Below are positions 29,257-38,505 of a DNA stretch of 64,000 nt, piece by piece; positions within the stretch are counted from its first letter, which is position 1, and every line of letters begins with the position of its first letter. The stretch is from Paramoeba atlantica (lineage: Eukaryota > Protista > Discosea). The stretch is from contig CDRNVI010000024.1 in the NCBI GenBank assembly GCA_977017575.1, positions 186,001 to 250,000 on the forward strand, given 5' to 3'. Below the pieces are notes generated by a model that worked only from the letters and a program-made list of their open reading frames with translations, did no database searches and was not told the origin of the DNA. A program made the position numbers and the translations under genes.

Positions 29257-32040
29257 CTACGTTGTAGATTGCGGACGTAGAGGGTGGTTTTGAGGAATCT
29301 CACTTGGGGTCGTATTCACCTCTTCAAAGCCTTCTTGACGAAAAGGCCGTGCCCCAAGCACACGAATAATATCATCGCGAGTGAGAAGTTCGTACGTTAA
29401 AAGGTGTTGCGCAATCTCCTCTGTTTGCTTTTCGTGCTCGCGGACGATCTTCATGGTCTTCTGGAACGCTCGGTCTACCAATTCTTTGGCCTCTGCATCC
29501 AGTTTTTGTGCCGTCTCATCGGAGTATCTCTTGGCCGATATCATATCGTCCTGACCGGGAGGGCGAAGACTGGTAGAGGACAGCCCCGGAACCCGTCCGT
29601 ACAGCCCAACCAGGGCATAGGCGAGACGATACACCTTTGTGAGATCATCCTGAGCACCGGTCGAGAGATGGTTAAAAAACACAAGCTCTGCCACACGGCC
29701 TCCCAAGCACACGCAAAGGTCGTCGTACATCTCTTTTTCCGTCTGCAGGCTGTGCTCCGTGGGGAGATACTGCGCGTAGCCCAGCGCCTTCCCACCTCGC
29801 GGAACAATGGAAACCTTCATCAGGGGATCGGCACGCTCCAGAAACCACCCGACTACGGCGTGACCGGCTTCGTGATGGGCCACCACACGACGTTCAAACG
29901 CGGACAAAACCTGGGCGCGCTTCTCAATTCCAGCCAGGACCCGGTCCGCGGCCTTTTCCAGGCAAATCAGATCGATAAAACACATCGAATGACGCGCAGC
30001 CAGAATCGCGGCCTCGTTACAAACGTTGCGAATATCCGCCCCGGTGAATCCAGGACAAATCTGTGCCATACGCTTGGCAAAGTTTTCCACCACAGACATG
30101 TTATTTTTTATGATCGGACGCAATGATATGTTGGCAGAGACGAGATCAGGATGAGGAGAGAGGGGATCCCTTTTCAGCACGGGGACAGTTACTGGGATTG
30201 GCTCCGTTACCTTTTCGGAATTCTCTGACAGTGCATCCTCTAGACGAGTCGGTTCAAACTTGTGCTCGCGTAATTTCGGCTTGTCATCGCCTTTTTTGGC
30301 TGATCCCGAGTTTGCATCCACAAGAGATTTTTCAGCACGCTCCCTTGTGAGTAATTCCTCTTTCTTGCGTTCCTCTTCTCGAAAAATAAAATCTGGATTA
30401 AGAGGATCCTGGTACGACAAACTCGGGACTAGATTCACCTTTTCCAAATAGTATGTAAAAAGCTCTTCGCGCTCCTTAATTAATGGCTTGTCAATGTTTA
30501 CCATGCGATCAAGACGACCGGGACGTACCAGCGCGGGATCTAGAACACTTACGGGCGCATTGGTGGAGGCGATCGTGATGACGTTAGCCTTGGAGTTGAA
30601 CCCGTCCAAACAGGCAAGGAGTTGGTTTAGGGTGTGCTCTCTTTCCTGTCCTCCCCCACGTAAATCCCCGGTTCGCTTCATTCCGATCGCGTCCACTTCG
30701 TCGATGTACACAATACACGGAGCAAAGCGCTGAGCTTGCTCATAAAGTTTTCGTACGCGGAGTGCACCCATGCCAGCGTAGAGCTCCACGAAATCACTGC
30801 CGCAGCAGGCAATGAATTTAGCCTTGGCTTCACCCGCCATCGCTTTGGCCAGCAACGTCTTGCCCACACCAGGAGGACCGAGTAACAGTGCTCCGTTTGG
30901 AATCTTCGCGCCAAGCGCAAGAAACCGAGAAGGGTTACCTAGAAACTCAACGAATTCGGACACTTCTCTTTTGGCCTCATACATCCCCACCACGTCGCGG
31001 AAACTCATTTGACTCGTAGCGGGCTGAAACTGAATCGAATTTTTAATGTCCATCATCTTATTTCCGGACCGGCTTCCGGAACCCCCGGGCGACATTCCCA
31101 TGGGAGGCATCATCGGGCGCATATAGGAGCTCAGCAGCAAGGGGACATACAGCAGCGGGACCACCCACACCAGTACACCCAGTGCAGTTACCCCCCACTC
31201 CGACCAGGAGGTGTACTTATATTTTGCTGTGATGCTCTCCCCGTGAGATTTCTGAGCCAATGGCAGCATGAATGTGTCAAAGTAACTCACATCGGGGATA
31301 GTGGTGTAGTAGAAAGACACGAACGCTCCTGGCTCGTACCACTGAACATAGGTGTTATACACCGTACAGCGATCGAAACGTAGTGGAGTGCTGTCGTGCT
31401 GGTTTCGCAGTACCTCCTCTAAGGATACGGCGTATCCCTTTGGGAGGCTAAAGTAGTAGAAAATTAAGGACAGAACGGCGAAACGAAGTAGCAGATTTCG
31501 CACCACTCGGTAAATATCATCGTTGTCTTCCTCTGCCTCTGGTTCTTGGGATCTGTTGCTGTTTTTGTCCTGATCAGATTTCCCGGAATTTCCTGGAAGT
31601 TTGGGACCAGAAGTTTTCCGTATATGAATATTTCCAGCCGATTTCCCCAAGTGGCTTTGCGAAATAGAACCGAATACTTTCCATTGTGATCCGGAAAGAC
31701 AGTCAGAAGAAATGTGAGATCTTTTTAGTGCTGTGCTAGTAGGTGAATGTTCGACAGCACATAAAGATGACTCCATGGGAGGATTGTCGCAACTTCGTAA
31801 ATTTGTAGAACCAAGAGCAGAGGATTTTCGTACTTCATTGAAAAGCACCCGAAGATCTGATGAAAAAATATTTCCAATAAGTCCTCTTGCATCCGTGTTC
31901 GATAACAACTTGTTTCTCAACAACGATAATCTCAAGTGTAGTCCCGCTACGTAGCTTCTCATATTAAATGTGCCACGCCTGGTAGGAAGAGCTTTGAAAC
32001 AAAGTCGCACTACTGGAGCTCTTGCGCAATCACCAGTCAT
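29257..32040 (-). CDS. ftsH: Mitochondrial FtsH/AFG3-like (m-AAA) metalloprotease
   Basis: Two TM segments, GPPGVGKT, YIDEVD, RPGRLDR, HEAGH, STGAQDDL. Confidence 0.95.
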   Translation of the reverse strand: MTGDCARAPVVRLCFKALPTRRGTFNMRSYVAGLHLRLSLLRNKLLSNTDARGLIGNIFSSDLRVLFNEVRKSSALGSTNLRSCDNPPMESSLCAVEHSPTSTALKRSHISSDCLSGSQWKVFGSISQSHLGKSAGNIHIRKTSGPKLPGNSGKSDQDKNSNRSQEPEAEEDNDDIYRVVRNLLLRFAVLSLIFYYFSLPKGYAVSLEEVLRNQHDSTPLRFDRCTVYNTYVQWYEPGAFVSFYYTTIPDVSYFDTFMLPLAQKSHGESITAKYKYTSWSEWGVTALGVLVWVVPLLYVPLLLSSYMRPMMPPMGMSPGGSGSRSGNKMMDIKNSIQFQPATSQMSFRDVVGMYEAKREVSEFVEFLGNPSRFLALGAKIPNGALLLGPPGVGKTLLAKAMAGEAKAKFIACCGSDFVELYAGMGALRVRKLYEQAQRFAPCIVYIDEVDAIGMKRTGDLRGGGQEREHTLNQLLACLDGFNSKANVITIASTNAPVSVLDPALVRPGRLDRMVNIDKPLIKEREELFTYYLEKVNLVPSLSYQDPLNPDFIFREEERKKEELLTRERAEKSLVDANSGSAKKGDDKPKLREHKFEPTRLEDALSENSEKVTEPIPVTVPVLKRDPLSPHPDLVSANISLRPIIKNNMSVVENFAKRMAQICPGFTGADIRNVCNEAAILAARHSMCFIDLICLEKAADRVLAGIEKRAQVLSAFERRVVAHHEAGHAVVGWFLERADPLMKVSIVPRGGKALGYAQYLPTEHSLQTEKEMYDDLCVCLGGRVAELVFFNHLSTGAQDDLTKVYRLAYALVGLYGRVPGLSSTSLRPPGQDDMISAKRYSDETAQKLDAEAKELVDRAFQKTMKIVREHEKQTEEIAQHLLTYELLTRDDIIRVLGARPFRQEGFEEVNTTPSEIPQNHPLRPQSTT

Positions 32041-32988: not shown

Positions 32989-33672
32989 TTATACACAGTG
33001 TAACAATTGCTCCTCTATAACGGGAATCTCATTATCGTCATCCCTACATGATTCGGTAAAGTATTCGGCATGTCCCGTAAGGTTCACACTATTGGCGACA
33101 TCACGTAATATTTCAAACAATAGGTTTGACGACCCACTGCAGGATTTCGCATCCGAAACTGAAGTCCGTTGTGACAGCTGAGGTTCATCAGCACGCGAAC
33201 AATTGTGTAGCCATAAACGAATGATATTATCATGTAACACTCTCTCTAGACTAACTCCTAGAATATATTTTGTAAACCTATGCACATATGCAAGGTAGCG
33301 GCATAGTTTGCAGAATGTTAGGGTAACGTCTTGCACGTTACCCCTCACATGAATCTTCCACAACCCGCTTTCCCCAGTTTCACCGTTGTTTTTTAGATTT
33401 AGGCTCTGCAAGAAAGCCAGAGAAGAGTTTGGTTGTAGGATCAGAGAGGGTATTGTGCATGGTAAGGGAGGAAAGCTCACGTTACAGGTCTCGTGTATTA
33501 ATAAGGATGAGTAATCTTTGTCACACCTTTTTGTGGAAACGGTATAATAAAATTTCCACACATTTGGAGATGTACGATAGCCAGATAGAATTGCTTTTTG
33601 TTCGGTAAGTCGATCGTCCGTTTGATGTGGGTTCGGATGGAAAGAAGACGCTAACGGATTTAATTTGCCCAT
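32989..33672 (-). CDS. Divergent eIF4E-fold protein
   Basis: By-eye alignment: WKFYY ~ WALWF, SGLWKI ~ GGRWLI, ILGVSLERV..IIRLW ~ VCGAVVNVR..KIAIW. No WED motif. Confidence 0.5.
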   Translation of the reverse strand: MGKLNPLASSFHPNPHQTDDRLTEQKAILSGYRTSPNVWKFYYTVSTKRCDKDYSSLLIHETCNVSFPPLPCTIPSLILQPNSSLAFLQSLNLKNNGETGESGLWKIHVRGNVQDVTLTFCKLCRYLAYVHRFTKYILGVSLERVLHDNIIRLWLHNCSRADEPQLSQRTSVSDAKSCSGSSNLLFEILRDVANSVNLTGHAEYFTESCRDDDNEIPVIEEQLLHCV

Positions 33673-34040
33673 TTTTGAAAGTCCAAAATTATGTTTACAG
33701 TAAAAGTTCAAACCGTTTAGAGTAGGTGAAAAAAATGGCACGAACAAACATTTCCAAAGAATTCAACGCTTGCCACGTGGATGTACAGGTCGCTTACGAA
33801 TGGTATCGTAATTGTATTTCCTAACGAAATTTATATGAAAGTTTGTTAAAACTAGTTAAACTACATGCTCCGGATATGATACCTACCAGTAGTATACCAC
33901 GTGGTACAGCAAACAAAAAAGGTAAACCATTTTCATCCGTCTTTCAGATGGCATAAGATTGATATATCAATGTAAAGTACTTTGAAGCATATTACGAATG
34001 CGAGCCACACGACAGCAAAAAAAACGTCAAGGCGTTCGTA

Positions 34041-34790
34041 CTACTTTCGCTTTGTAACATTTGTCCCACCCGTCGTAAGAAATAAATTTTCGGGTAGAAG
34101 TGAGGTTTCGATATCACCATAGAGACACTGGTTATGATCCAAATGTAGAGATTCTAGACGTGATGGAAGTGAGTCCAATTTGATAAGACCAGAAAAACAA
34201 TTGAAAGACAAATCCAGAGATTGCAGTCTTGAACAGGAAGAAAGCAACTCAAAATTTGGCGCCCCTCTCAAGTGGTTTCGACTCAAATCGAGGTGAGTTA
34301 ACGTTTGCGGTAAAAACGAAAAATCAATTTCACCGCTAAATAAATTCCTCAAAAGGTACACTCGTTGCATTGCTGGAGGAAGACAATCCAAATGTACAGA
34401 TCCGGAGAAATTATTTGAATCTAAATTCAGAAGCACGAGAGAGGTGGGTGAAGTGTCAATATCCATCTCACCACTGAGTTGGTTGTAATCTAGCATAAAA
34501 CGTGGTAAAATCTGTGGCAAATAACGGAAATGCAATCGTCCGGAGAGTTTATATGACGACCAAGAGATTCCCAACAAAGTCTCTTTGCGACATATTACGC
34601 CCTTCCACTTACAACCTGGGATGCCAATTTCCCAGGTGGGATGTGGATTAACGATATCTTGGGTGAGTCGCGCAAAATCGTATTCTAGTGGGAGATTAGC
34701 GCCACGAACTTTTGATGGGCCGGCAGATGGATCTGCGCCTTGCAGAGCCAAAGCTATGAACACATACGTTAAACCAATGGCAAATGGCAT
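34041..34790 (-). CDS. LRR protein (23-aa repeat family), possible signal peptide
   Basis: MPFAIGLTYVFIALALQGADPS, the family cap, then about 7 LRRs. Confidence 0.9.
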   Translation of the reverse strand: MPFAIGLTYVFIALALQGADPSAGPSKVRGANLPLEYDFARLTQDIVNPHPTWEIGIPGCKWKGVICRKETLLGISWSSYKLSGRLHFRYLPQILPRFMLDYNQLSGEMDIDTSPTSLVLLNLDSNNFSGSVHLDCLPPAMQRVYLLRNLFSGEIDFSFLPQTLTHLDLSRNHLRGAPNFELLSSCSRLQSLDLSFNCFSGLIKLDSLPSRLESLHLDHNQCLYGDIETSLLPENLFLTTGGTNVTKRK

Positions 34791-35136
34791 GAAATAATAG
34801 GTATCTAACGGACACAACAGTATCTCAAAAGCGTACACAGTCCATGTTTGCTTTCAAACTCCCATTTCTTAATATTTCATATTTTCATACGCCCTCCTGC
34901 ATGAATTGTACGGATATGTTTACATTATAGCGTCTACATGGATTTTAATCTGTGTAAAGCAAGGACAAATGTACTTTGGAAATTCAAAAGATGAAGATCA
35001 CTTCACACTTCACCTCAGACGAAGACAATGTTCTGTATTGCTCGCCGGACCTCACCGGCGACACTGTAGTAAAATACTGTAAGAATTTTACCTGCTGTAG
35101 GCAATGGTTTAAAATTATGTTTTTTGAAATGAATCT

Positions 35137-35589
35137 CTAAAAGTCTTGTAGACAGGCTTTAAAACTAGCAAACTCGTTTTGTCGCAAGAACCATAGACTA
35201 TAGATAGCATCCAATCCTTTCATTAATATCCTTCCCTCCGATGTTGTTGACCAAGGTAGAAGGGGAGATTGTGAGCTCTCCTTCAATTCGAGCTTGAAAA
35301 TAGAAATTTTATGCAAATTTGTTCGGTTTAATAAGATCAGTGACAAGGCAGATGAGTCTGTAGTCGTTAAAAACATACATCCCTGTATTCCAGTGTTTTC
35401 CCAACGTTTGAATTCAGCAAAATATTTGTATAACGTGACATGAGTAGAGGTTTGTAAAACACGATTTACGTCCCCCATAACCGTTCTAATGTACTTTAAA
35501 TTTAGTTCGGAAGCCGCAGAAGTGATGCCGAAAGGATCACTTGAGTTCGTCTTCATGTATTGTAAACCTTCTTCGTTATAGTCTTGCAT
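35137..35589 (-). CDS. DCP1: mRNA decapping activator DCP1 (EVH1-like domain)
   Basis: LNLKYIR..V..VL..STHVTLYKY....WENTGIQG.MFL..LILLNR..IYSLWF..E follows the Dcp1 consensus along its whole length. Confidence 0.85.
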   Translation of the reverse strand: MQDYNEEGLQYMKTNSSDPFGITSAASELNLKYIRTVMGDVNRVLQTSTHVTLYKYFAEFKRWENTGIQGCMFLTTTDSSALSLILLNRTNLHKISIFKLELKESSQSPLLPWSTTSEGRILMKGLDAIYSLWFLRQNEFASFKACLQDF

Positions 35590-35976
35590 TTTTTTATATT
35601 AGGCGGTTCCCATCGACTGCAGAAATTTTACCAAGTCAATACTTGACTTGGCGCATAAAAAATATGGAATATTTTTTTTGGAATAAACGTTTATATTTGT
35701 ATGTGTTACGCACAAAGGTTATCTTTGAAAGAGACATGTACGTACCAGTCATAATTCGTGATTAAATTAGTATTAAACAAACGTAAAAATTCGTACCGTA
35801 AATCAACCACGATTCGAAAGAAAAAAGTACGATTGAAAACGTCATATTGAACACACAATCATGTGCTTGAAAACGCGGAGCAAAATGTTTCTTTGACTAG
35901 ATGAACCCGGAGTATCATGCGACTGTCATCTAATCGTGAGCATCAAACCGAAACCGATTTCATAGAAGGTTCCATA

Positions 35977-38505
35977 TCACCACGAAAGTGCATGTCGACC
36001 GCTGTTTCTACCCTTCCCTTTTGCATGATGACGTGACTTGAGCCGACGTCGGAATTCACAGGCTTTCCCTCGAGCTGTTTTCACCAGTGACCACAGCCGA
36101 TCCTCACACATAAGACAACCGGTAAGAGCCCCACCATGGAGGTTGTGTTCCTCTGTACCTTTGTGAAAGGTAAACTGTACATGATTCGCTCCGCACTCGG
36201 TACACGTGTGTGTGCCGCCCGGTTTGTGTAGATCCACGCGATAGACCACAGGCTCAATTTTCCACAACGAGGTGCAGAGATTGCAACAGAATTTCCATTT
36301 CGGTGCCGAGGAGGGATCCAGGATCATCGTGCCACGCTCACAGGTGTCACATGGAGCCACACCGAGCGTCGTGGCCGAGTACGCACACGTCGGATGACGA
36401 CACTGATTACATCCCATATTCGATGCGGTGGAGCCCTTTTCGGTGAACGGGGGGTTATTGTAGCAGTAGGGACATAAGGGGTAACTTTTGCCCTCTTTTA
36501 CACTAAAGAGCAAAAGCCCGAACTCGTCCAGCGGACATTTCGCCCCACCAAACTCTTTAATGCTCCCATTCTGTGGTAGAGCGTAGGTTACGTTACATTT
36601 ACCACAGAACAGCCTTTGAGGGCGAAAGTGAATATAGCGCATGTAGGTTTGACATAAGCCACAGCGAGTGATGTATTTGCCCGTCGTGGACACGGGGTCG
36701 AACTTGCTCTGCATCAAAGCATCCATTCGCTCTACGTTAGCCTGGAAAAAGACAAACTTTTCCAAAAAGTTTGAGAGGACATGTGCGATAATCTCCTCCT
36801 TCGCCGCGGTACCATTCGCGATGCGCTCTACCTGTACTTCGACATGAGACCGCACTTTCGGGAGCGCCAACTCTGGATCAATACACTGATAGCCATGAAT
36901 CAGTGTCACCCCTAACGGGGTAGGTTCCATTGTACGACGAGGACCAATTCTACAATAATTTCGATCACATAAATTTTGAATATGCGACGGAATCGAGGCA
37001 TCGGTGCCTATCCCATTTTTTTCCATGAGCGTCACCAAATCCGACTCAGTAAGGTACGACGCAGGGGACGTGGTTCCCTGGACCACCACACATTTCTCTA
37101 CATGAAGTTCCTGTTCCCTATCCAGCGCGCAGGGGCTTACCCTTGTATTTCCCGCATTTTCCCCCAGCACGGCAGTCCATCCTGAATCCCCGATCGACCT
37201 CCATGTTTTTACAAAAACCTCCGGGCCGTACTTCAGCTGTGAGCGCGTGACCTCATACGTCGCATGGGGGGAGAGACTGGCAATAAAGTGTCGGGTGACG
37301 TACTCATAAATACGCCAGCGATCCCCCTGGAGGGTTTCCGGGGAGGCTACCCGCATTGGGGTAATCGGGGGATGATCCCCTTTATCTACCCCACCACCTC
37401 GTGCCACGACCTTGTCCGCAGAAAGGAGATTGGTCGCAAACGAGCCCCAGAGAGGGGATCCGGATTGCTGCTCGAGTACCTCTGAAAGGTTAAACGAGGG
37501 GGGATAGCGTGTGGACTCGGTTCGAGGATAGCTGAGATAGCCCTCCATGTAGAGTGACTCCGCGAGTGCCATCGTAGTGGCGGGACTGAGGCCGAGCTCC
37601 CGAGAACACACCCGGAGAAGCTCTACCGTGTTGAGAGCGGGGGGACAGGATTTACGTTCTCGGCTGCGATCGATGGATTTAACCTTGCAACGAGTCCCGG
37701 AACACATTTTTAAGAGTAACTGGGCCAGAGGCTCGTCGTAGACACGTCCACGATTCCAACTGAAGGATGTCGTATCATTATGGAGGGTCACAGCGAGCTG
37801 CAGCTTCCAGTACCTTTCCTCTTTGAAATGGGTAATGTGGTCGTGTCGTTGTACGCAAAATCCCAGTGTAGGGGTTTGACAGGGGCCGTAGCTAATCACG
37901 GAGGCGTCCAAATTCCCGTACTTACCTTGAAAGAACTTTGTCTGAAACCTTGTAAAGGCGCAGCCGATTTTTAGATCTATTTCCTGTCGTGCCTCTACGC
38001 TGTTGGACATATTTTGATTGGGTCGTGACAGGGAGGAGAGAGCTGAGTGCAAAGCGTGGGATGTTATGGCAGAAAACCGAGCACGGTATATCCTGGAGGA
38101 ATTTCGGATGTACTTCTCTACAATGGAGATAACTTCGAAACAAATATTTTCGCCTTCTTTGTCGCAGTCCAACCAAAGTACGAGATAGTCACAGTCACGG
38201 GCAGAGTGCGAAAGGTGATGCACAATGGAGCTAGAGGTTTCCTTCTTTATTGTGGTTGCAGAGAATAGTGCTGTTTCATCCTGACCTTCCCATTTCTGAT
38301 ACTTTTGATGAAAATCAATCGAAAAAACGTGTCCCGCAACGCTCACCATGCGAAACTGCACAGTACGATTGAGTGGTGGAAAGTTCCCTTCCCATTCGTA
38401 GGTATTCCTCGATGACTTTACCGACCGCATTCGTTTGTGCGACAACAATTCTGAAATGGAAGAAGCCAGAGACGGCTTCTCCGCAACCATTAATACGCGT
38501 ACCAT
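35977..38505 (-). CDS. TOP3B: DNA topoisomerase III beta
   Basis: VLMVAEKPSLA, DCDKEGENI, GYLSYPRTES, GIGTDAS, C-terminal zinc-ribbon tail. The natural start is M58 of the track ORF. Confidence 0.95.
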   Translation of the reverse strand: MVRVLMVAEKPSLASSISELLSHKRMRSVKSSRNTYEWEGNFPPLNRTVQFRMVSVAGHVFSIDFHQKYQKWEGQDETALFSATTIKKETSSSIVHHLSHSARDCDYLVLWLDCDKEGENICFEVISIVEKYIRNSSRIYRARFSAITSHALHSALSSLSRPNQNMSNSVEARQEIDLKIGCAFTRFQTKFFQGKYGNLDASVISYGPCQTPTLGFCVQRHDHITHFKEERYWKLQLAVTLHNDTTSFSWNRGRVYDEPLAQLLLKMCSGTRCKVKSIDRSRERKSCPPALNTVELLRVCSRELGLSPATTMALAESLYMEGYLSYPRTESTRYPPSFNLSEVLEQQSGSPLWGSFATNLLSADKVVARGGGVDKGDHPPITPMRVASPETLQGDRWRIYEYVTRHFIASLSPHATYEVTRSQLKYGPEVFVKTWRSIGDSGWTAVLGENAGNTRVSPCALDREQELHVEKCVVVQGTTSPASYLTESDLVTLMEKNGIGTDASIPSHIQNLCDRNYCRIGPRRTMEPTPLGVTLIHGYQCIDPELALPKVRSHVEVQVERIANGTAAKEEIIAHVLSNFLEKFVFFQANVERMDALMQSKFDPVSTTGKYITRCGLCQTYMRYIHFRPQRLFCGKCNVTYALPQNGSIKEFGGAKCPLDEFGLLLFSVKEGKSYPLCPYCYNNPPFTEKGSTASNMGCNQCRHPTCAYSATTLGVAPCDTCERGTMILDPSSAPKWKFCCNLCTSLWKIEPVVYRVDLHKPGGTHTCTECGANHVQFTFHKGTEEHNLHGGALTGCLMCEDRLWSLVKTARGKACEFRRRLKSRHHAKGKGRNSGRHALSW

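What the first reader, a model, noticed from the sequence alone, without database searches (positions are those of the whole stretch)
35137..35589. Canonical decapping factor DCP1 in a kinetoplastid-type genome
Seen: a compact 150-aa Dcp1 EVH1-like domain with HVTLYKY, WENTGIQG, LILLNR and IYSLWF. Known: trypanosomatids lack recognisable DCP1/DCP2 and decap with the ApaH-like phosphatase ALPH1. Inference: this lineage retains ancestral Dcp1(/Dcp2) decapping, which would date the switch to ALPH1 and raise the question of how SL-capped mRNA is decapped here. It may already be noted for early-branching kinetoplastids; I cannot check.
Basis: partly seen in the sequence, partly recalled or inferred. 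Interest (0 to 1): 0.7.

Follow-up and report, generated by a model that had tools for sequence, protein, structure and literature searches.

The report
Dcp1 decapping activator in a prokinetoplastid
The 150-codon gene is a genuine Dcp1, the partner of the standard mRNA-decapping enzyme Dcp2. It lies in the genome of an early-branching relative of trypanosomes that also keeps Dcp2 and lacks the trypanosome replacement enzyme ALPH1, so published statements that this whole group lacks Dcp1 need correcting.

Summary
Window 35137-35589 (minus strand) is an intact 150-aa ORF with all four quoted motifs.

**Family.** It matches Pfam DCP1 at 67 bits (cut-off 22.5). Its AlphaFold model (pLDDT 84) has solved Dcp1 structures as its 20 best PDB matches, ahead of Ena/VASP EVH1 and Ran-binding domains.

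**Genome.**
- It is kinetoplastid: one-strand gene array and a spliced-leader-like sequence.
- A V-ATPase A tree favours Prokinetoplastina (with Papus and Perkinsela), but the AU test does not reject the alternative (p 0.07).

**Relatives.**
- The nearest named ones are Dcp1 of Apiculatamorpha, Papus and Perkinsela.
- They form one clade with the window's protein (97/99).
- Perkinsela shares the gene order DCP1 – RPL17 – FtsH.

**Rest of the pathway.** The genome also has:
- an intact Dcp2 (box A plus a complete Nudix box);
- an Edc4-like WD40 protein;
- only one ApaH-like phosphatase, of the non-ALPH1 type.

So canonical Dcp1/Dcp2 decapping looks vertically retained.

**Novelty.** A 2026 paper already places the DCP2-to-ALPH1 switch in Metakinetoplastina. 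No paper I found reports Dcp1 there, and several state that it is absent. The scan had already noted DCP2 in this genome on other DNA. Binding and activity are inferred, not shown.

The parts
35137..35589 (-). DCP1 coding sequence, 150 aa plus stop codon
   Evidence: ORF. Pfam PF06058 at 67.1 bits, E 1.7e-18. PDB phmmer best hits are S. pombe Dcp1 and human DCP1a. Foldseek top 20 are all Dcp1.
35143..35526 (-). EVH1/PH-like core, residues 22-149: N-terminal helix 22-38, seven strands, C-terminal helix 137-149
   Evidence: AlphaFold2 model m92acbd11ad01, mean pLDDT 84, pTM 0.75. TM-score up to 0.85 to S. pombe Dcp1 chains.
35524..35538 (-). N-terminal DPFGI motif (residues 18-22), shared with Papus and Apiculatamorpha Dcp1; role unknown
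   Evidence: Alignment A1: the window, Papus and Apiculatamorpha proteins all have DPFGI, and the environmental relatives have a related FLGI. The motif is not present in the other Dcp1 rows.
35401..35430 (-). Aromatic cleft residues Y54 (35428-35430) and W63 (35401-35403), aligned with S. pombe Dcp1 Y36 and W45
   Evidence: The phmmer alignment to 2qkl_A gives the residue correspondence. Both positions are invariant in the 25-row alignment A1. That these residues line the proline-rich-peptide cleft is from my own knowledge of the Dcp1 structures.
35323..35328 (-). Asn88-Arg89, aligned with the 'NR loop' (S. pombe N70-R71) implicated in Dcp2 activation
   Evidence: Alignment. N88 is nearly invariant in A1. 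The loop's role is from Chang et al. 2014, whose title is cited in PMC13069679 and PMC10415143.
32289..32792 (-). Ribosomal protein L17e/L22p gene, a synteny anchor downstream of DCP1
   Evidence: Pfam Ribosomal_L22. The same order DCP1 -> Ribosomal_L22 -> FtsH occurs on one strand in Perkinsela LFNC01000001.1.
29257..32040 (-). FtsH-type AAA/M41 protease gene, the second synteny anchor
   Evidence: Pfam AAA + Peptidase_M41. The same neighbour is present in Perkinsela.

Best explanation
This is the orthologue of the decapping activator Dcp1 in a prokinetoplastid, an early-branching kinetoplastid related to Perkinsela, Papus and Apiculatamorpha. It is an EVH1-only Dcp1 of the fission-yeast type.

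Inferred mechanism:
- Its EVH1 domain binds the N-terminal regulatory domain of the Dcp2 encoded 158 kb away on the same contig.
- It stabilises the active closed form of Dcp2 through the conserved Asn-Arg loop.
- It offers its aromatic cleft (Y54, W63) to proline-rich co-activators.
- Together they remove the cap of deadenylated, spliced-leader-bearing mRNAs ahead of 5'-3' decay.

The gene was inherited vertically. Canonical Dcp1/Dcp2 decapping survives in Prokinetoplastina and was replaced by ALPH1 only in Metakinetoplastina.

Shown here: family membership, fold, conserved key residues, co-occurrence with an intact Dcp2, absence of an ALPH1-type gene, a prokinetoplastid Dcp1 clade, and synteny. 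Inferred: Dcp1-Dcp2 binding, activation, the substrate, and expression.
For: **Family and fold**
- Pfam DCP1 at 67 bits.
- PDB sequence hits are only Dcp1 at E<=1e-4.
- The AF2 model has pLDDT 84. Its 20 best PDB matches are Dcp1 chains, E 5e-9 to 1e-5 and TMt up to 0.85; Ena/VASP EVH1 domains come only from E 3e-5 and Ran-binding domains from E 7e-5.
- The language-model look-alikes are all DCP1 clusters.
- Y54, W63 and G70 are invariant and N88 is nearly invariant among 25 Dcp1 rows. They align with S. pombe Y36, W45 and N70.

**Partner and pathway**
- Dcp2 has box A (37.8 bits) plus NUDIX (37.5 bits) and a complete G-x5-E-x7-REUxEExGU box.
- Its best PDB hits are yeast Dcp2, E 6.7e-24, covering both domains.
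- An Edc4-like Ge1_WD40 protein scores 53 bits, and there is an Scd6-like LSM14 protein.
- The only ApaH-like gene per haplotype has GDIHG...LDTG and ends right after the catalytic domain. ALPH1 has GDVHG/IDTG plus a C-terminal extension of 220-278 aa (PMC8220851).

**Lineage and descent**
- In the V-ATPase A tree the window falls in the Papus+Perkinsela clade (99/96), which is sister to the metakinetoplastid clade of 36 rows.
- The nearest Dcp1 relatives in 1.8 billion representatives are Apiculatamorpha, Papus, Perkinsela and one environmental cluster.
- These form one clade at 97/99.
- The order DCP1 - RPL17 - FtsH is shared with Perkinsela.
- PMC13069679 independently reports DCP2-like proteins and no ALPH1 in Prokinetoplastina.
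Against: - No direct evidence of binding or activity; the complex prediction gave no verdict.
- Expression rests on two short contigs of a run only guessed to be RNA.
- The two genomic copies differ by 5 non-synonymous and 1 synonymous change. This is too few to test, and it is no sign of purifying selection on the recent time-scale.
- No Pat1 or FDF (Edc3) Pfam match was found.
- The AU test does not quite reject placing the organism with Metakinetoplastina on the single marker used (p 0.07), and the window's branch is long.
- Dcp1 and Dcp2 are both very divergent; word searches found only themselves.
Confidence: 0.75

Rival explanations
1. It is a true Dcp1-family protein but no longer works in decapping. 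It is either a relic drifting towards loss or an EVH1 adaptor put to another use.
For: The allelic comparison shows 5 non-synonymous to 1 synonymous difference. The protein is very divergent, at most 36% identical to its nearest relatives. No Pat1 or Edc3-type FDF match was found in the genome. The complex prediction gave no verdict.
Against: The ORF is intact in both copies. The functionally important Y54, W63 and N88-R89 are kept across four prokinetoplastid lineages. The partner Dcp2 keeps every Nudix catalytic residue. No alternative ALPH1-type decapping enzyme was found. Six differences are too few to infer relaxed selection.
Confidence: 0.12
2. Dcp1 and Dcp2 were acquired by lateral transfer in the prokinetoplastid ancestor, as was proposed for Perkinsela Dcp2 in 2017, rather than retained from the euglenozoan ancestor.
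For: PMC5491325 suggested transfer from plants for Perkinsela Dcp2. The deep position of the prokinetoplastid Dcp1 clade is unresolved (63/26 for its next neighbour). I could not name any Dcp1 from diplonemids, euglenids or other Discoba among the hits.
Against: The 2017 argument rested on Perkinsela lacking all other complex members. That is wrong: Perkinsela has a Dcp1 (46.5 bits). The prokinetoplastid Dcp1s sit on a long stem of their own (length 1.11) and do not nest in plants or animals. PMC13069679 reports DCP2-like proteins in diplonemids and euglenids too. Two unlinked genes of one complex would both have had to be transferred.
Confidence: 0.08
3. The contig is not from a kinetoplastid, so the Dcp1 is simply that of a host, prey or contaminant.
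For: The assembly comes from an ENA analysis with metagenome-style contig names.
Against: All supported genes in the 64 kb lie on one strand without introns. The genome carries the kinetoplastid spliced-leader 3' end. V-ATPase A from the same window falls inside Kinetoplastea at 100/99. Microsynteny with Perkinsela spans the DCP1 locus itself.
Confidence: 0.02
4. It belongs to another EVH1/PH-like family: WASP/Ena WH1, Homer, or a Ran-binding domain.
For: These families share the fold. Weak RanBP hits appear at E 0.3-1.5, and ENAH EVH1 appears at Foldseek E about 3e-5.
Against: No WH1 or RanBD Pfam hit at E<=1. Dcp1 structures outrank all others. The genome has a separate WH1 protein of the WASP type, which scores 49.5 bits on WH1 and only 20 bits on DCP1.
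Confidence: 0.01

Closest known systems
Schizosaccharomyces pombe Dcp1 (PDB 2QKL/2QKM, 5J3Q, 5KQ1)
   Same: Both are EVH1-only proteins of 127-150 aa with an N-terminal helix. The aligned Y36/W45 and N70-R71 are conserved as Y54/W63 and N88-R89. It is the best sequence and fold match.
   Different: Only about 15% identity in the structural alignment. The window protein has about 20 extra N-terminal residues with a DPFGI motif and a three-residue insertion after the NR loop. Binding to Dcp2 is not shown.
Human DCP1a / Drosophila DCP1 EVH1 domains (PDB 4B6H, 2LYD)
   Same: Same domain and cleft; Foldseek E 7e-9 and 1e-7.
   Different: Metazoan and plant DCP1 carry a long C-terminal region with a trimerisation domain that docks on EDC4. 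The window protein ends with the EVH1 domain (150 aa).
Prokinetoplastid Dcp1: Apiculatamorpha spiralis EP00759_P052661 (KEGG label DCP1B), Papus ankaliazontas EP00760_P002455, Perkinsela KNH09684.1 ('hypothetical protein')
   Same: They are the nearest relatives (34-36% identity) and form one clade with the window (97/99). They share the lineage-specific pattern LNRTN-H and LWFLRQ. Synteny is shared with Perkinsela.
   Different: They are very divergent from each other. The Perkinsela protein is the most derived (branch 2.3). None has been discussed as Dcp1 in the papers I could search.
Trypanosoma brucei ALPH1 decapping complex (PMC5491325, PMC10415143)
   Same: It does the same cellular job: removing the cap of deadenylated, spliced-leader-bearing mRNA ahead of XRNA.
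   Different: It is an unrelated enzyme (an ApaH-like phosphatase) with kinetoplastid-specific partners. This genome has only a non-ALPH1-type ALPH.

Membership tests
Dcp1 (Pfam PF06058) | Profile match above the curated gathering score over the whole domain | tested here: met
   67.1 bits against 22.5, profile positions 2-116 of 117. It is the only family at E<=1.
Dcp1 (Pfam PF06058) | EVH1/PH-like beta-sandwich with a Dcp1-specific N-terminal helix and a C-terminal helix | tested here: met
   The AF2 model (pLDDT 84) has helix 22-38, seven strands and helix 137-149. The top 20 PDB matches are all Dcp1.
Dcp1 (Pfam PF06058) | Conserved aromatic cleft residues (S. pombe Y36, W45) | tested here: met
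   Y54 and W63 align with them and are invariant in A1.
Dcp1 (Pfam PF06058) | Asn-Arg loop needed for Dcp2 activation | tested here: met
   N88-R89 align with S. pombe N70-R71. N88 is nearly invariant.
Dcp1 (Pfam PF06058) | A Dcp2 partner (box A regulatory domain plus catalytic Nudix) in the same genome | tested here: met
   a 321-330 aa Dcp2 on C24 and C11 with a complete Nudix box.
Dcp1 (Pfam PF06058) | Physical binding to Dcp2 and stimulation of decapping | not testable with these tools
   Complex prediction returned no verdict. This needs a pull-down and a decapping assay.
Metazoan/plant-type DCP1 | C-terminal extension with a trimerisation domain | tested here: not met
   The protein ends at residue 150, directly after the EVH1 C-terminal helix. 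It is of the yeast-like short type.
WH1/EVH1 of WASP/Ena/Homer | Pfam WH1 match | tested here: not met
   No WH1 hit at E<=1. A genuine WH1 protein elsewhere in the genome scores 49.5 bits on WH1.
ALPH1 (kinetoplastid decapping phosphatase), sought in the genome | Motif 1 GDVHG, motif 6 IDTG, and a C-terminal extension of 220-278 aa (PMC8220851) | tested here: not met
   The only ALPH (C49/C29) has GDIHG and LDTG and ends about 35 residues after motif 6. No paralogue was found.
Prokinetoplastina (genome assignment) | Branches with Papus and Perkinsela, outside Metakinetoplastina | tested here: inconclusive
   The V-ATPase A tree puts it there at 99/96, and the Dcp1 clade and Perkinsela synteny agree. 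However, the AU test on the single marker gives p 0.07 for the alternative.

The most novel reading that the evidence does not exclude
Prokinetoplastids run a complete canonical decapping machine on spliced-leader mRNAs: a short Dcp1, Dcp2 and an Edc4-like scaffold. Their caps are probably hypermethylated, because a VP39-like cap methyltransferase is present. If so, neither trans-splicing nor the unusual cap forced the change to ALPH1. The swap happened on the stem of Metakinetoplastina. Dcp1 was present in the euglenozoan ancestor, contrary to the published view that Dcp1 is absent from all Discoba.
Probability: 0.5. Interest if true: 0.6.

Novelty: new member of a known kind. Interest (0 to 1): 0.45.

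Why it matters
Several papers state that kinetoplastids, and even all Discoba, lack Dcp1 (PMC5491325, PMC5862402, PMC8220851, PMC10415143). The 2017 proposal that Perkinsela obtained Dcp2 by lateral transfer rested on Perkinsela lacking every other complex member.

A bona fide Dcp1 in this genome, in Perkinsela (in synteny), in Papus and in Apiculatamorpha removes that argument. It supports the 2026 view (PMC13069679) that the Dcp2-to-ALPH1 replacement is confined to Metakinetoplastina.

It also offers a natural system for asking how a standard Dcp1/Dcp2 enzyme handles spliced-leader caps, and what changed when ALPH1 took over.

The advance is modest. The family is well known, the DCP2 half of the story is published, and public databases already carry automatic DCP1 labels for two of the relatives.

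Tried and rejected
- **Word-index searches.** Searches with Dcp1 and Dcp2 returned only the query's own protein. This shows divergence, not absence of relatives; the exhaustive HMMER search then found 24 relatives.
- **Complex prediction.** Complex prediction on Dcp2 residues 10-160 with Dcp1 residues 15-150 gave no verdict (score 0.00, alignment not used). This is evidence neither for nor against binding.
- **Missing Pfam families.** The Pfam FDF and PAT1 searches of the genome found nothing, but the controls rang nowhere, so absence is not shown.
- **Third DCP1-profile hit.** The hit on C140 (21 bits) is the WH1 domain of a WASP-like protein, not a Dcp1 paralogue.
- **Environmental relative.** Its contig (L020) shows no shared neighbours; the upstream gene has a SLATT_1 domain.
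- **Read laying.** This used only assembled contigs, so no spliced-leader junction, transcript ends or strand could be read.
- **AU test.** The test against a metakinetoplastid placement was not significant (p 0.07).
- **Supplements.** The supplement of PMC13069679 is not held, so I could not see whether its phylogenetic survey included Dcp1.

Full report
**1. The observation**

Window 35137-35589 holds an uninterrupted 150-codon ORF on the minus strand, from ATG to TAG. The plus strand of the interval is full of stops.

Against Pfam, the only family at E<=1 is PF06058 (Dcp1-like decapping family). The match scores 67.1 bits against a cut-off of 22.5, at E 1.7e-18, and covers profile positions 2-116 of 117.

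**2. Is it Dcp1 or another EVH1/PH domain?**

- By sequence against the PDB, only Dcp1 chains score at E<=1e-4 (S. pombe, human DCP1a, Drosophila). Ran-binding domains appear only at E 0.3-1.5.
- An AlphaFold2 model built on a 25-row alignment (A1) has mean pLDDT 84 and pTM 0.75. It shows an N-terminal helix (22-38), seven strands and a C-terminal helix (137-149).
- Foldseek against the PDB gives Dcp1 chains as the 20 best matches, from five species (E 5e-9 to 1e-5, TM-score by target up to 0.85). Ena/VASP EVH1 domains come only from E 3e-5 and Ran-binding domains from E 7e-5.
- The language-model atlas also returns only DCP1 clusters.
- The phmmer alignment to S. pombe Dcp1 places the window's Y54, W63 and N88-R89 on S. 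pombe Y36, W45 and N70-R71. From my knowledge of the solved complexes, these are the aromatic residues of the proline-rich-peptide cleft and the 'NR loop' needed for Dcp2 activation. The loop is the subject of Chang et al. 2014, as cited in PMC13069679.
- Y54, W63 and G70 are invariant, and V51, F73 and N88 nearly invariant, in A1.
- The protein stops right after the EVH1 domain. It is therefore the short, fission-yeast-like type, without the metazoan/plant trimerisation tail.

**3. What genome is this?**

- Every Pfam-supported gene I checked in the 64 kb lies on the minus strand without interruptions. These include TOP3B, an AAA ATPase, EF-G, PFK, FtsH and RPL17. This is the kinetoplastid polycistronic layout.
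- The genome (45.7 Mb, 248 contigs) contains the 3' end of a kinetoplastid/diplonemid-type spliced leader, in dispersed copies. At least one copy runs straight into an ORF after a poly(A) stretch. Earlier notes of this scan read these as leader-headed retroposons (s1-403552).
- The window's V-ATPase A subunit is closest to Papus ankaliazontas PhM-4 among named sequences (74% identity).
- In a maximum-likelihood tree it falls inside a seven-row clade with Papus and Perkinsela (99/96). That clade is sister to a 36-row metakinetoplastid clade (100/99), and all of these sit within Kinetoplastea (100/99).
- The window's branch is long. An AU test of the alternative 'window + Metakinetoplastina' gives p 0.07. 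The single marker therefore favours, but does not prove, a prokinetoplastid position.
- The next two lines of evidence, in section 4, agree with that position.

**4. Relatives and descent of the Dcp1**

The word-index search found nothing but the protein itself. The exhaustive HMMER search of 1.84 billion representatives found 25 proteins at E<=1e-3.

The best four short ones are:
- an environmental cluster (36% identity, E 7e-20);
- Apiculatamorpha spiralis PhF-6 (34%, E 6e-15), carrying an automatic KEGG label DCP1B;
- Papus ankaliazontas PhM-4 (36%, E 2e-13);
- Perkinsela sp. KNH09684.1 (34%, E 4e-5), labelled 'hypothetical protein'.

All four pass the Pfam DCP1 cut-off. In a tree of 25 Dcp1 domains, these and the window's two copies form one clade with 97/99 support on a stem of 1.1 substitutions per site.

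They share lineage-specific characters:
- an N-terminal DPFGI motif (in the window, Papus and Apiculatamorpha);
- the pattern LNRTN-H with a three-residue insertion after it;
- LWFLRQ in place of the usual IWF-type motif.

In the Perkinsela genome the Dcp1 gene is followed on the same strand by RPL17 (Ribosomal_L22) and an FtsH protease. In the window the order is DCP1, two small lineage-specific genes, RPL17, then FtsH, all on one strand. Clade plus microsynteny argue for orthology and vertical inheritance within Prokinetoplastina. They argue against contamination and against recent transfer.

**5. The rest of the pathway in this genome**

- **Dcp2.** The Pfam DCP2 box A profile hits two loci. 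The ORF (321-330 aa) has box A (37.8 bits), NUDIX (37.5 bits) and a complete Nudix box. Its best PDB matches are yeast Dcp2 (E 6.7e-24), over both the regulatory and the catalytic domain. On contig C24 it lies 158 kb from DCP1.
- **A second copy of the region.** Contig C11 carries a second DCP1-DCP2 pair at the same spacing. The two DCP1 copies differ at 6 of 453 bases, and the flanks differ by 1.6-1.8%. C11 and C24 are therefore haplotigs or young homeologues.
- **ApaH-like phosphatase.** An ApaH profile finds one gene per haplotype. It has GDIHG, GDLVVKG, GNHD, VVFGH and LDTG, and no C-terminal extension. No paralogue exists. By the criteria of PMC8220851, ALPH1 has GDVHG, IDTG and a C-terminal domain of 220-278 aa. 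This gene is therefore the non-ALPH1 type, like that of Euglena.
- **Edc4-like protein.** An 811-aa protein matches the Ge-1/Edc4 WD40 region above the cut-off (53 bits).
- **Scd6-like protein.** An Scd6-like LSM14 protein is present.
- **Not found.** The Pat1 and FDF profiles found nothing. Their controls were silent too, so this is not evidence of absence.
- **Cap methyltransferase.** A VP39-like cap 2'-O-methyltransferase homologue (PF01358, 52 bits) is present. From my knowledge this is the family of trypanosome MTr2/MTr3. It hints that a hypermethylated cap coexists with Dcp1/Dcp2 here.

**6. Expression**

Only assembled contigs were available. One run from 2015, guessed to be RNA, has two short contigs covering 35068-35450 and nothing else of the 4.7 kb laid. 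They carry the C11 allele at 35213. This is weak support for transcription. No spliced-leader junction could be read.

**7. Mechanism (inferred)**

As in fission yeast, the EVH1 domain would bind the N-terminal regulatory domain of Dcp2. It would promote the closed active state through the NR loop. It would recruit co-activators through the aromatic cleft.

The complex would decap deadenylated spliced-leader mRNAs for 5'-3' decay. The Edc4-like protein may act as a scaffold.

A complex prediction gave no verdict, so binding remains untested.

**8. Comparison with the literature**

- PMC5491325 (2017) and PMC8220851 (2021) state that kinetoplastids lack Dcp1 and Dcp2.
- PMC5491325 adds that Perkinsela has a Dcp2 but 'lacks all other components' and may have obtained it from plants.
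- PMC5862402 (2018) infers loss of Dcp1 in Kinetoplastea.
- PMC10415143 (2023) states that Dcp1, Pat1 and Edc1-4 are absent from Discoba and Metamonada.
- PMC13069679 (2026) revises the picture for DCP2. Loss of DCP2 and gain of ALPH1 are restricted to Metakinetoplastina. Prokinetoplastina (Perkinsela, Papus), euglenids and diplonemids have DCP2-like proteins and no ALPH1.
- None of these papers reports Dcp1 in these lineages. The 2026 supplement is not held.

What is added here:
- Dcp1 is retained too, in all four sampled prokinetoplastid lineages.
- It is in synteny with Perkinsela, which removes the basis of the lateral-transfer idea.

The scan's own earlier notes had already flagged DCP2 at the two loci of this genome (s1-386463, s1-392898). 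I re-tested both.

**9. Verdict**

This is a real and correctly identified gene. It is a new, divergent member of a well-known family in a lineage where the literature says the family is absent. The evolutionary implication is largely anticipated by a 2026 paper. Interest is moderate.

Noticed in passing
G000 C24 versus C11 (window 34237-35989 versus L002:1020-2772): Contigs C24 and C11 carry the same genes at the same spacing (DCP1 to DCP2 about 158 kb) in opposite orientation, and differ by 1.3-1.8%. Other genes also come in pairs on different contigs: ALPH on C49/C29, the Edc4-like gene on C70/C44, and Scd6 on C39/C40. The 45.7 Mb assembly therefore seems to hold two haplotypes or homeologues. 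The DCP1 copies differ by 5 non-synonymous and 1 synonymous change.
   Followed up: partly
window 35977-36200 versus L002:62-886: The C-terminal zinc-ribbon end of the neighbouring TOP3B gene reads differently in the C11 copy. After '...DLHKPG' the frame shifts and the protein ends about 45 residues early. This is either an allelic frameshift or an assembly indel.
   Followed up: no
L003:1402-2693 (G000 C140): A WASP-like gene: a WH1 domain (49.5 bits), then a CRIB/PBD domain (66 bits), a proline-rich stretch, a WH2 motif and an acidic tail. It is split over two reading frames 48 bases apart. The cause could be an intron, a frameshift, or a contig from another organism.
   Followed up: partly
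L018:1964-4396 (G000 C70; twin on C44): An 811-aa protein whose N-terminal WD40 region matches the Ge-1/Edc4 profile above the cut-off (53 bits). The C-terminal 500 residues have no Pfam match. It is a candidate decapping scaffold in a lineage said to lack Edc4.
   Followed up: partly
L010:1015-2325 (G000 C49; twin on C29): The single ApaH-like phosphatase, with about 130 N-terminal residues before the catalytic domain and no C-terminal domain. Its motifs are GDIHG, GDLVVKG, GNHD, VVFGH and LDTG, nearly the same set that PMC8220851 lists for Euglena ALPH.
   Followed up: partly
L021:151-1833 (G000 C60; twin on C51): A VP39-like methyltransferase homologue (PF01358, 52 bits, 560 aa). From my knowledge this is the family of the trypanosome cap-4 enzymes MTr2/MTr3, so a hypermethylated cap may coexist with Dcp1/Dcp2.
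   Followed up: no
L006:1470-1560 (G000 C3) and ten other places: The spliced-leader 3' end (…ACAGTTTCTGTACTTTGTTG) follows an A-run. It is followed directly by a 5' UTR and an ORF instead of a GT intron, as in retroposed leader-bearing RNA. Earlier notes of the scan cover this.
   Followed up: no
L019:6001-6417 (Perkinsela LFNC01000001.1): Perkinsela KNH09684.1, deposited as 'hypothetical protein XU18_0369', is a Dcp1 (Pfam 46.5 bits). The published statement that Perkinsela lacks all Dcp2 partners is therefore outdated.
   Followed up: yes
window 32989-34838: Two genes sit between DCP1 and RPL17 that Perkinsela lacks at this position: a 265-aa leucine-rich-repeat protein and a 252-aa protein with no Pfam match.
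   Followed up: no
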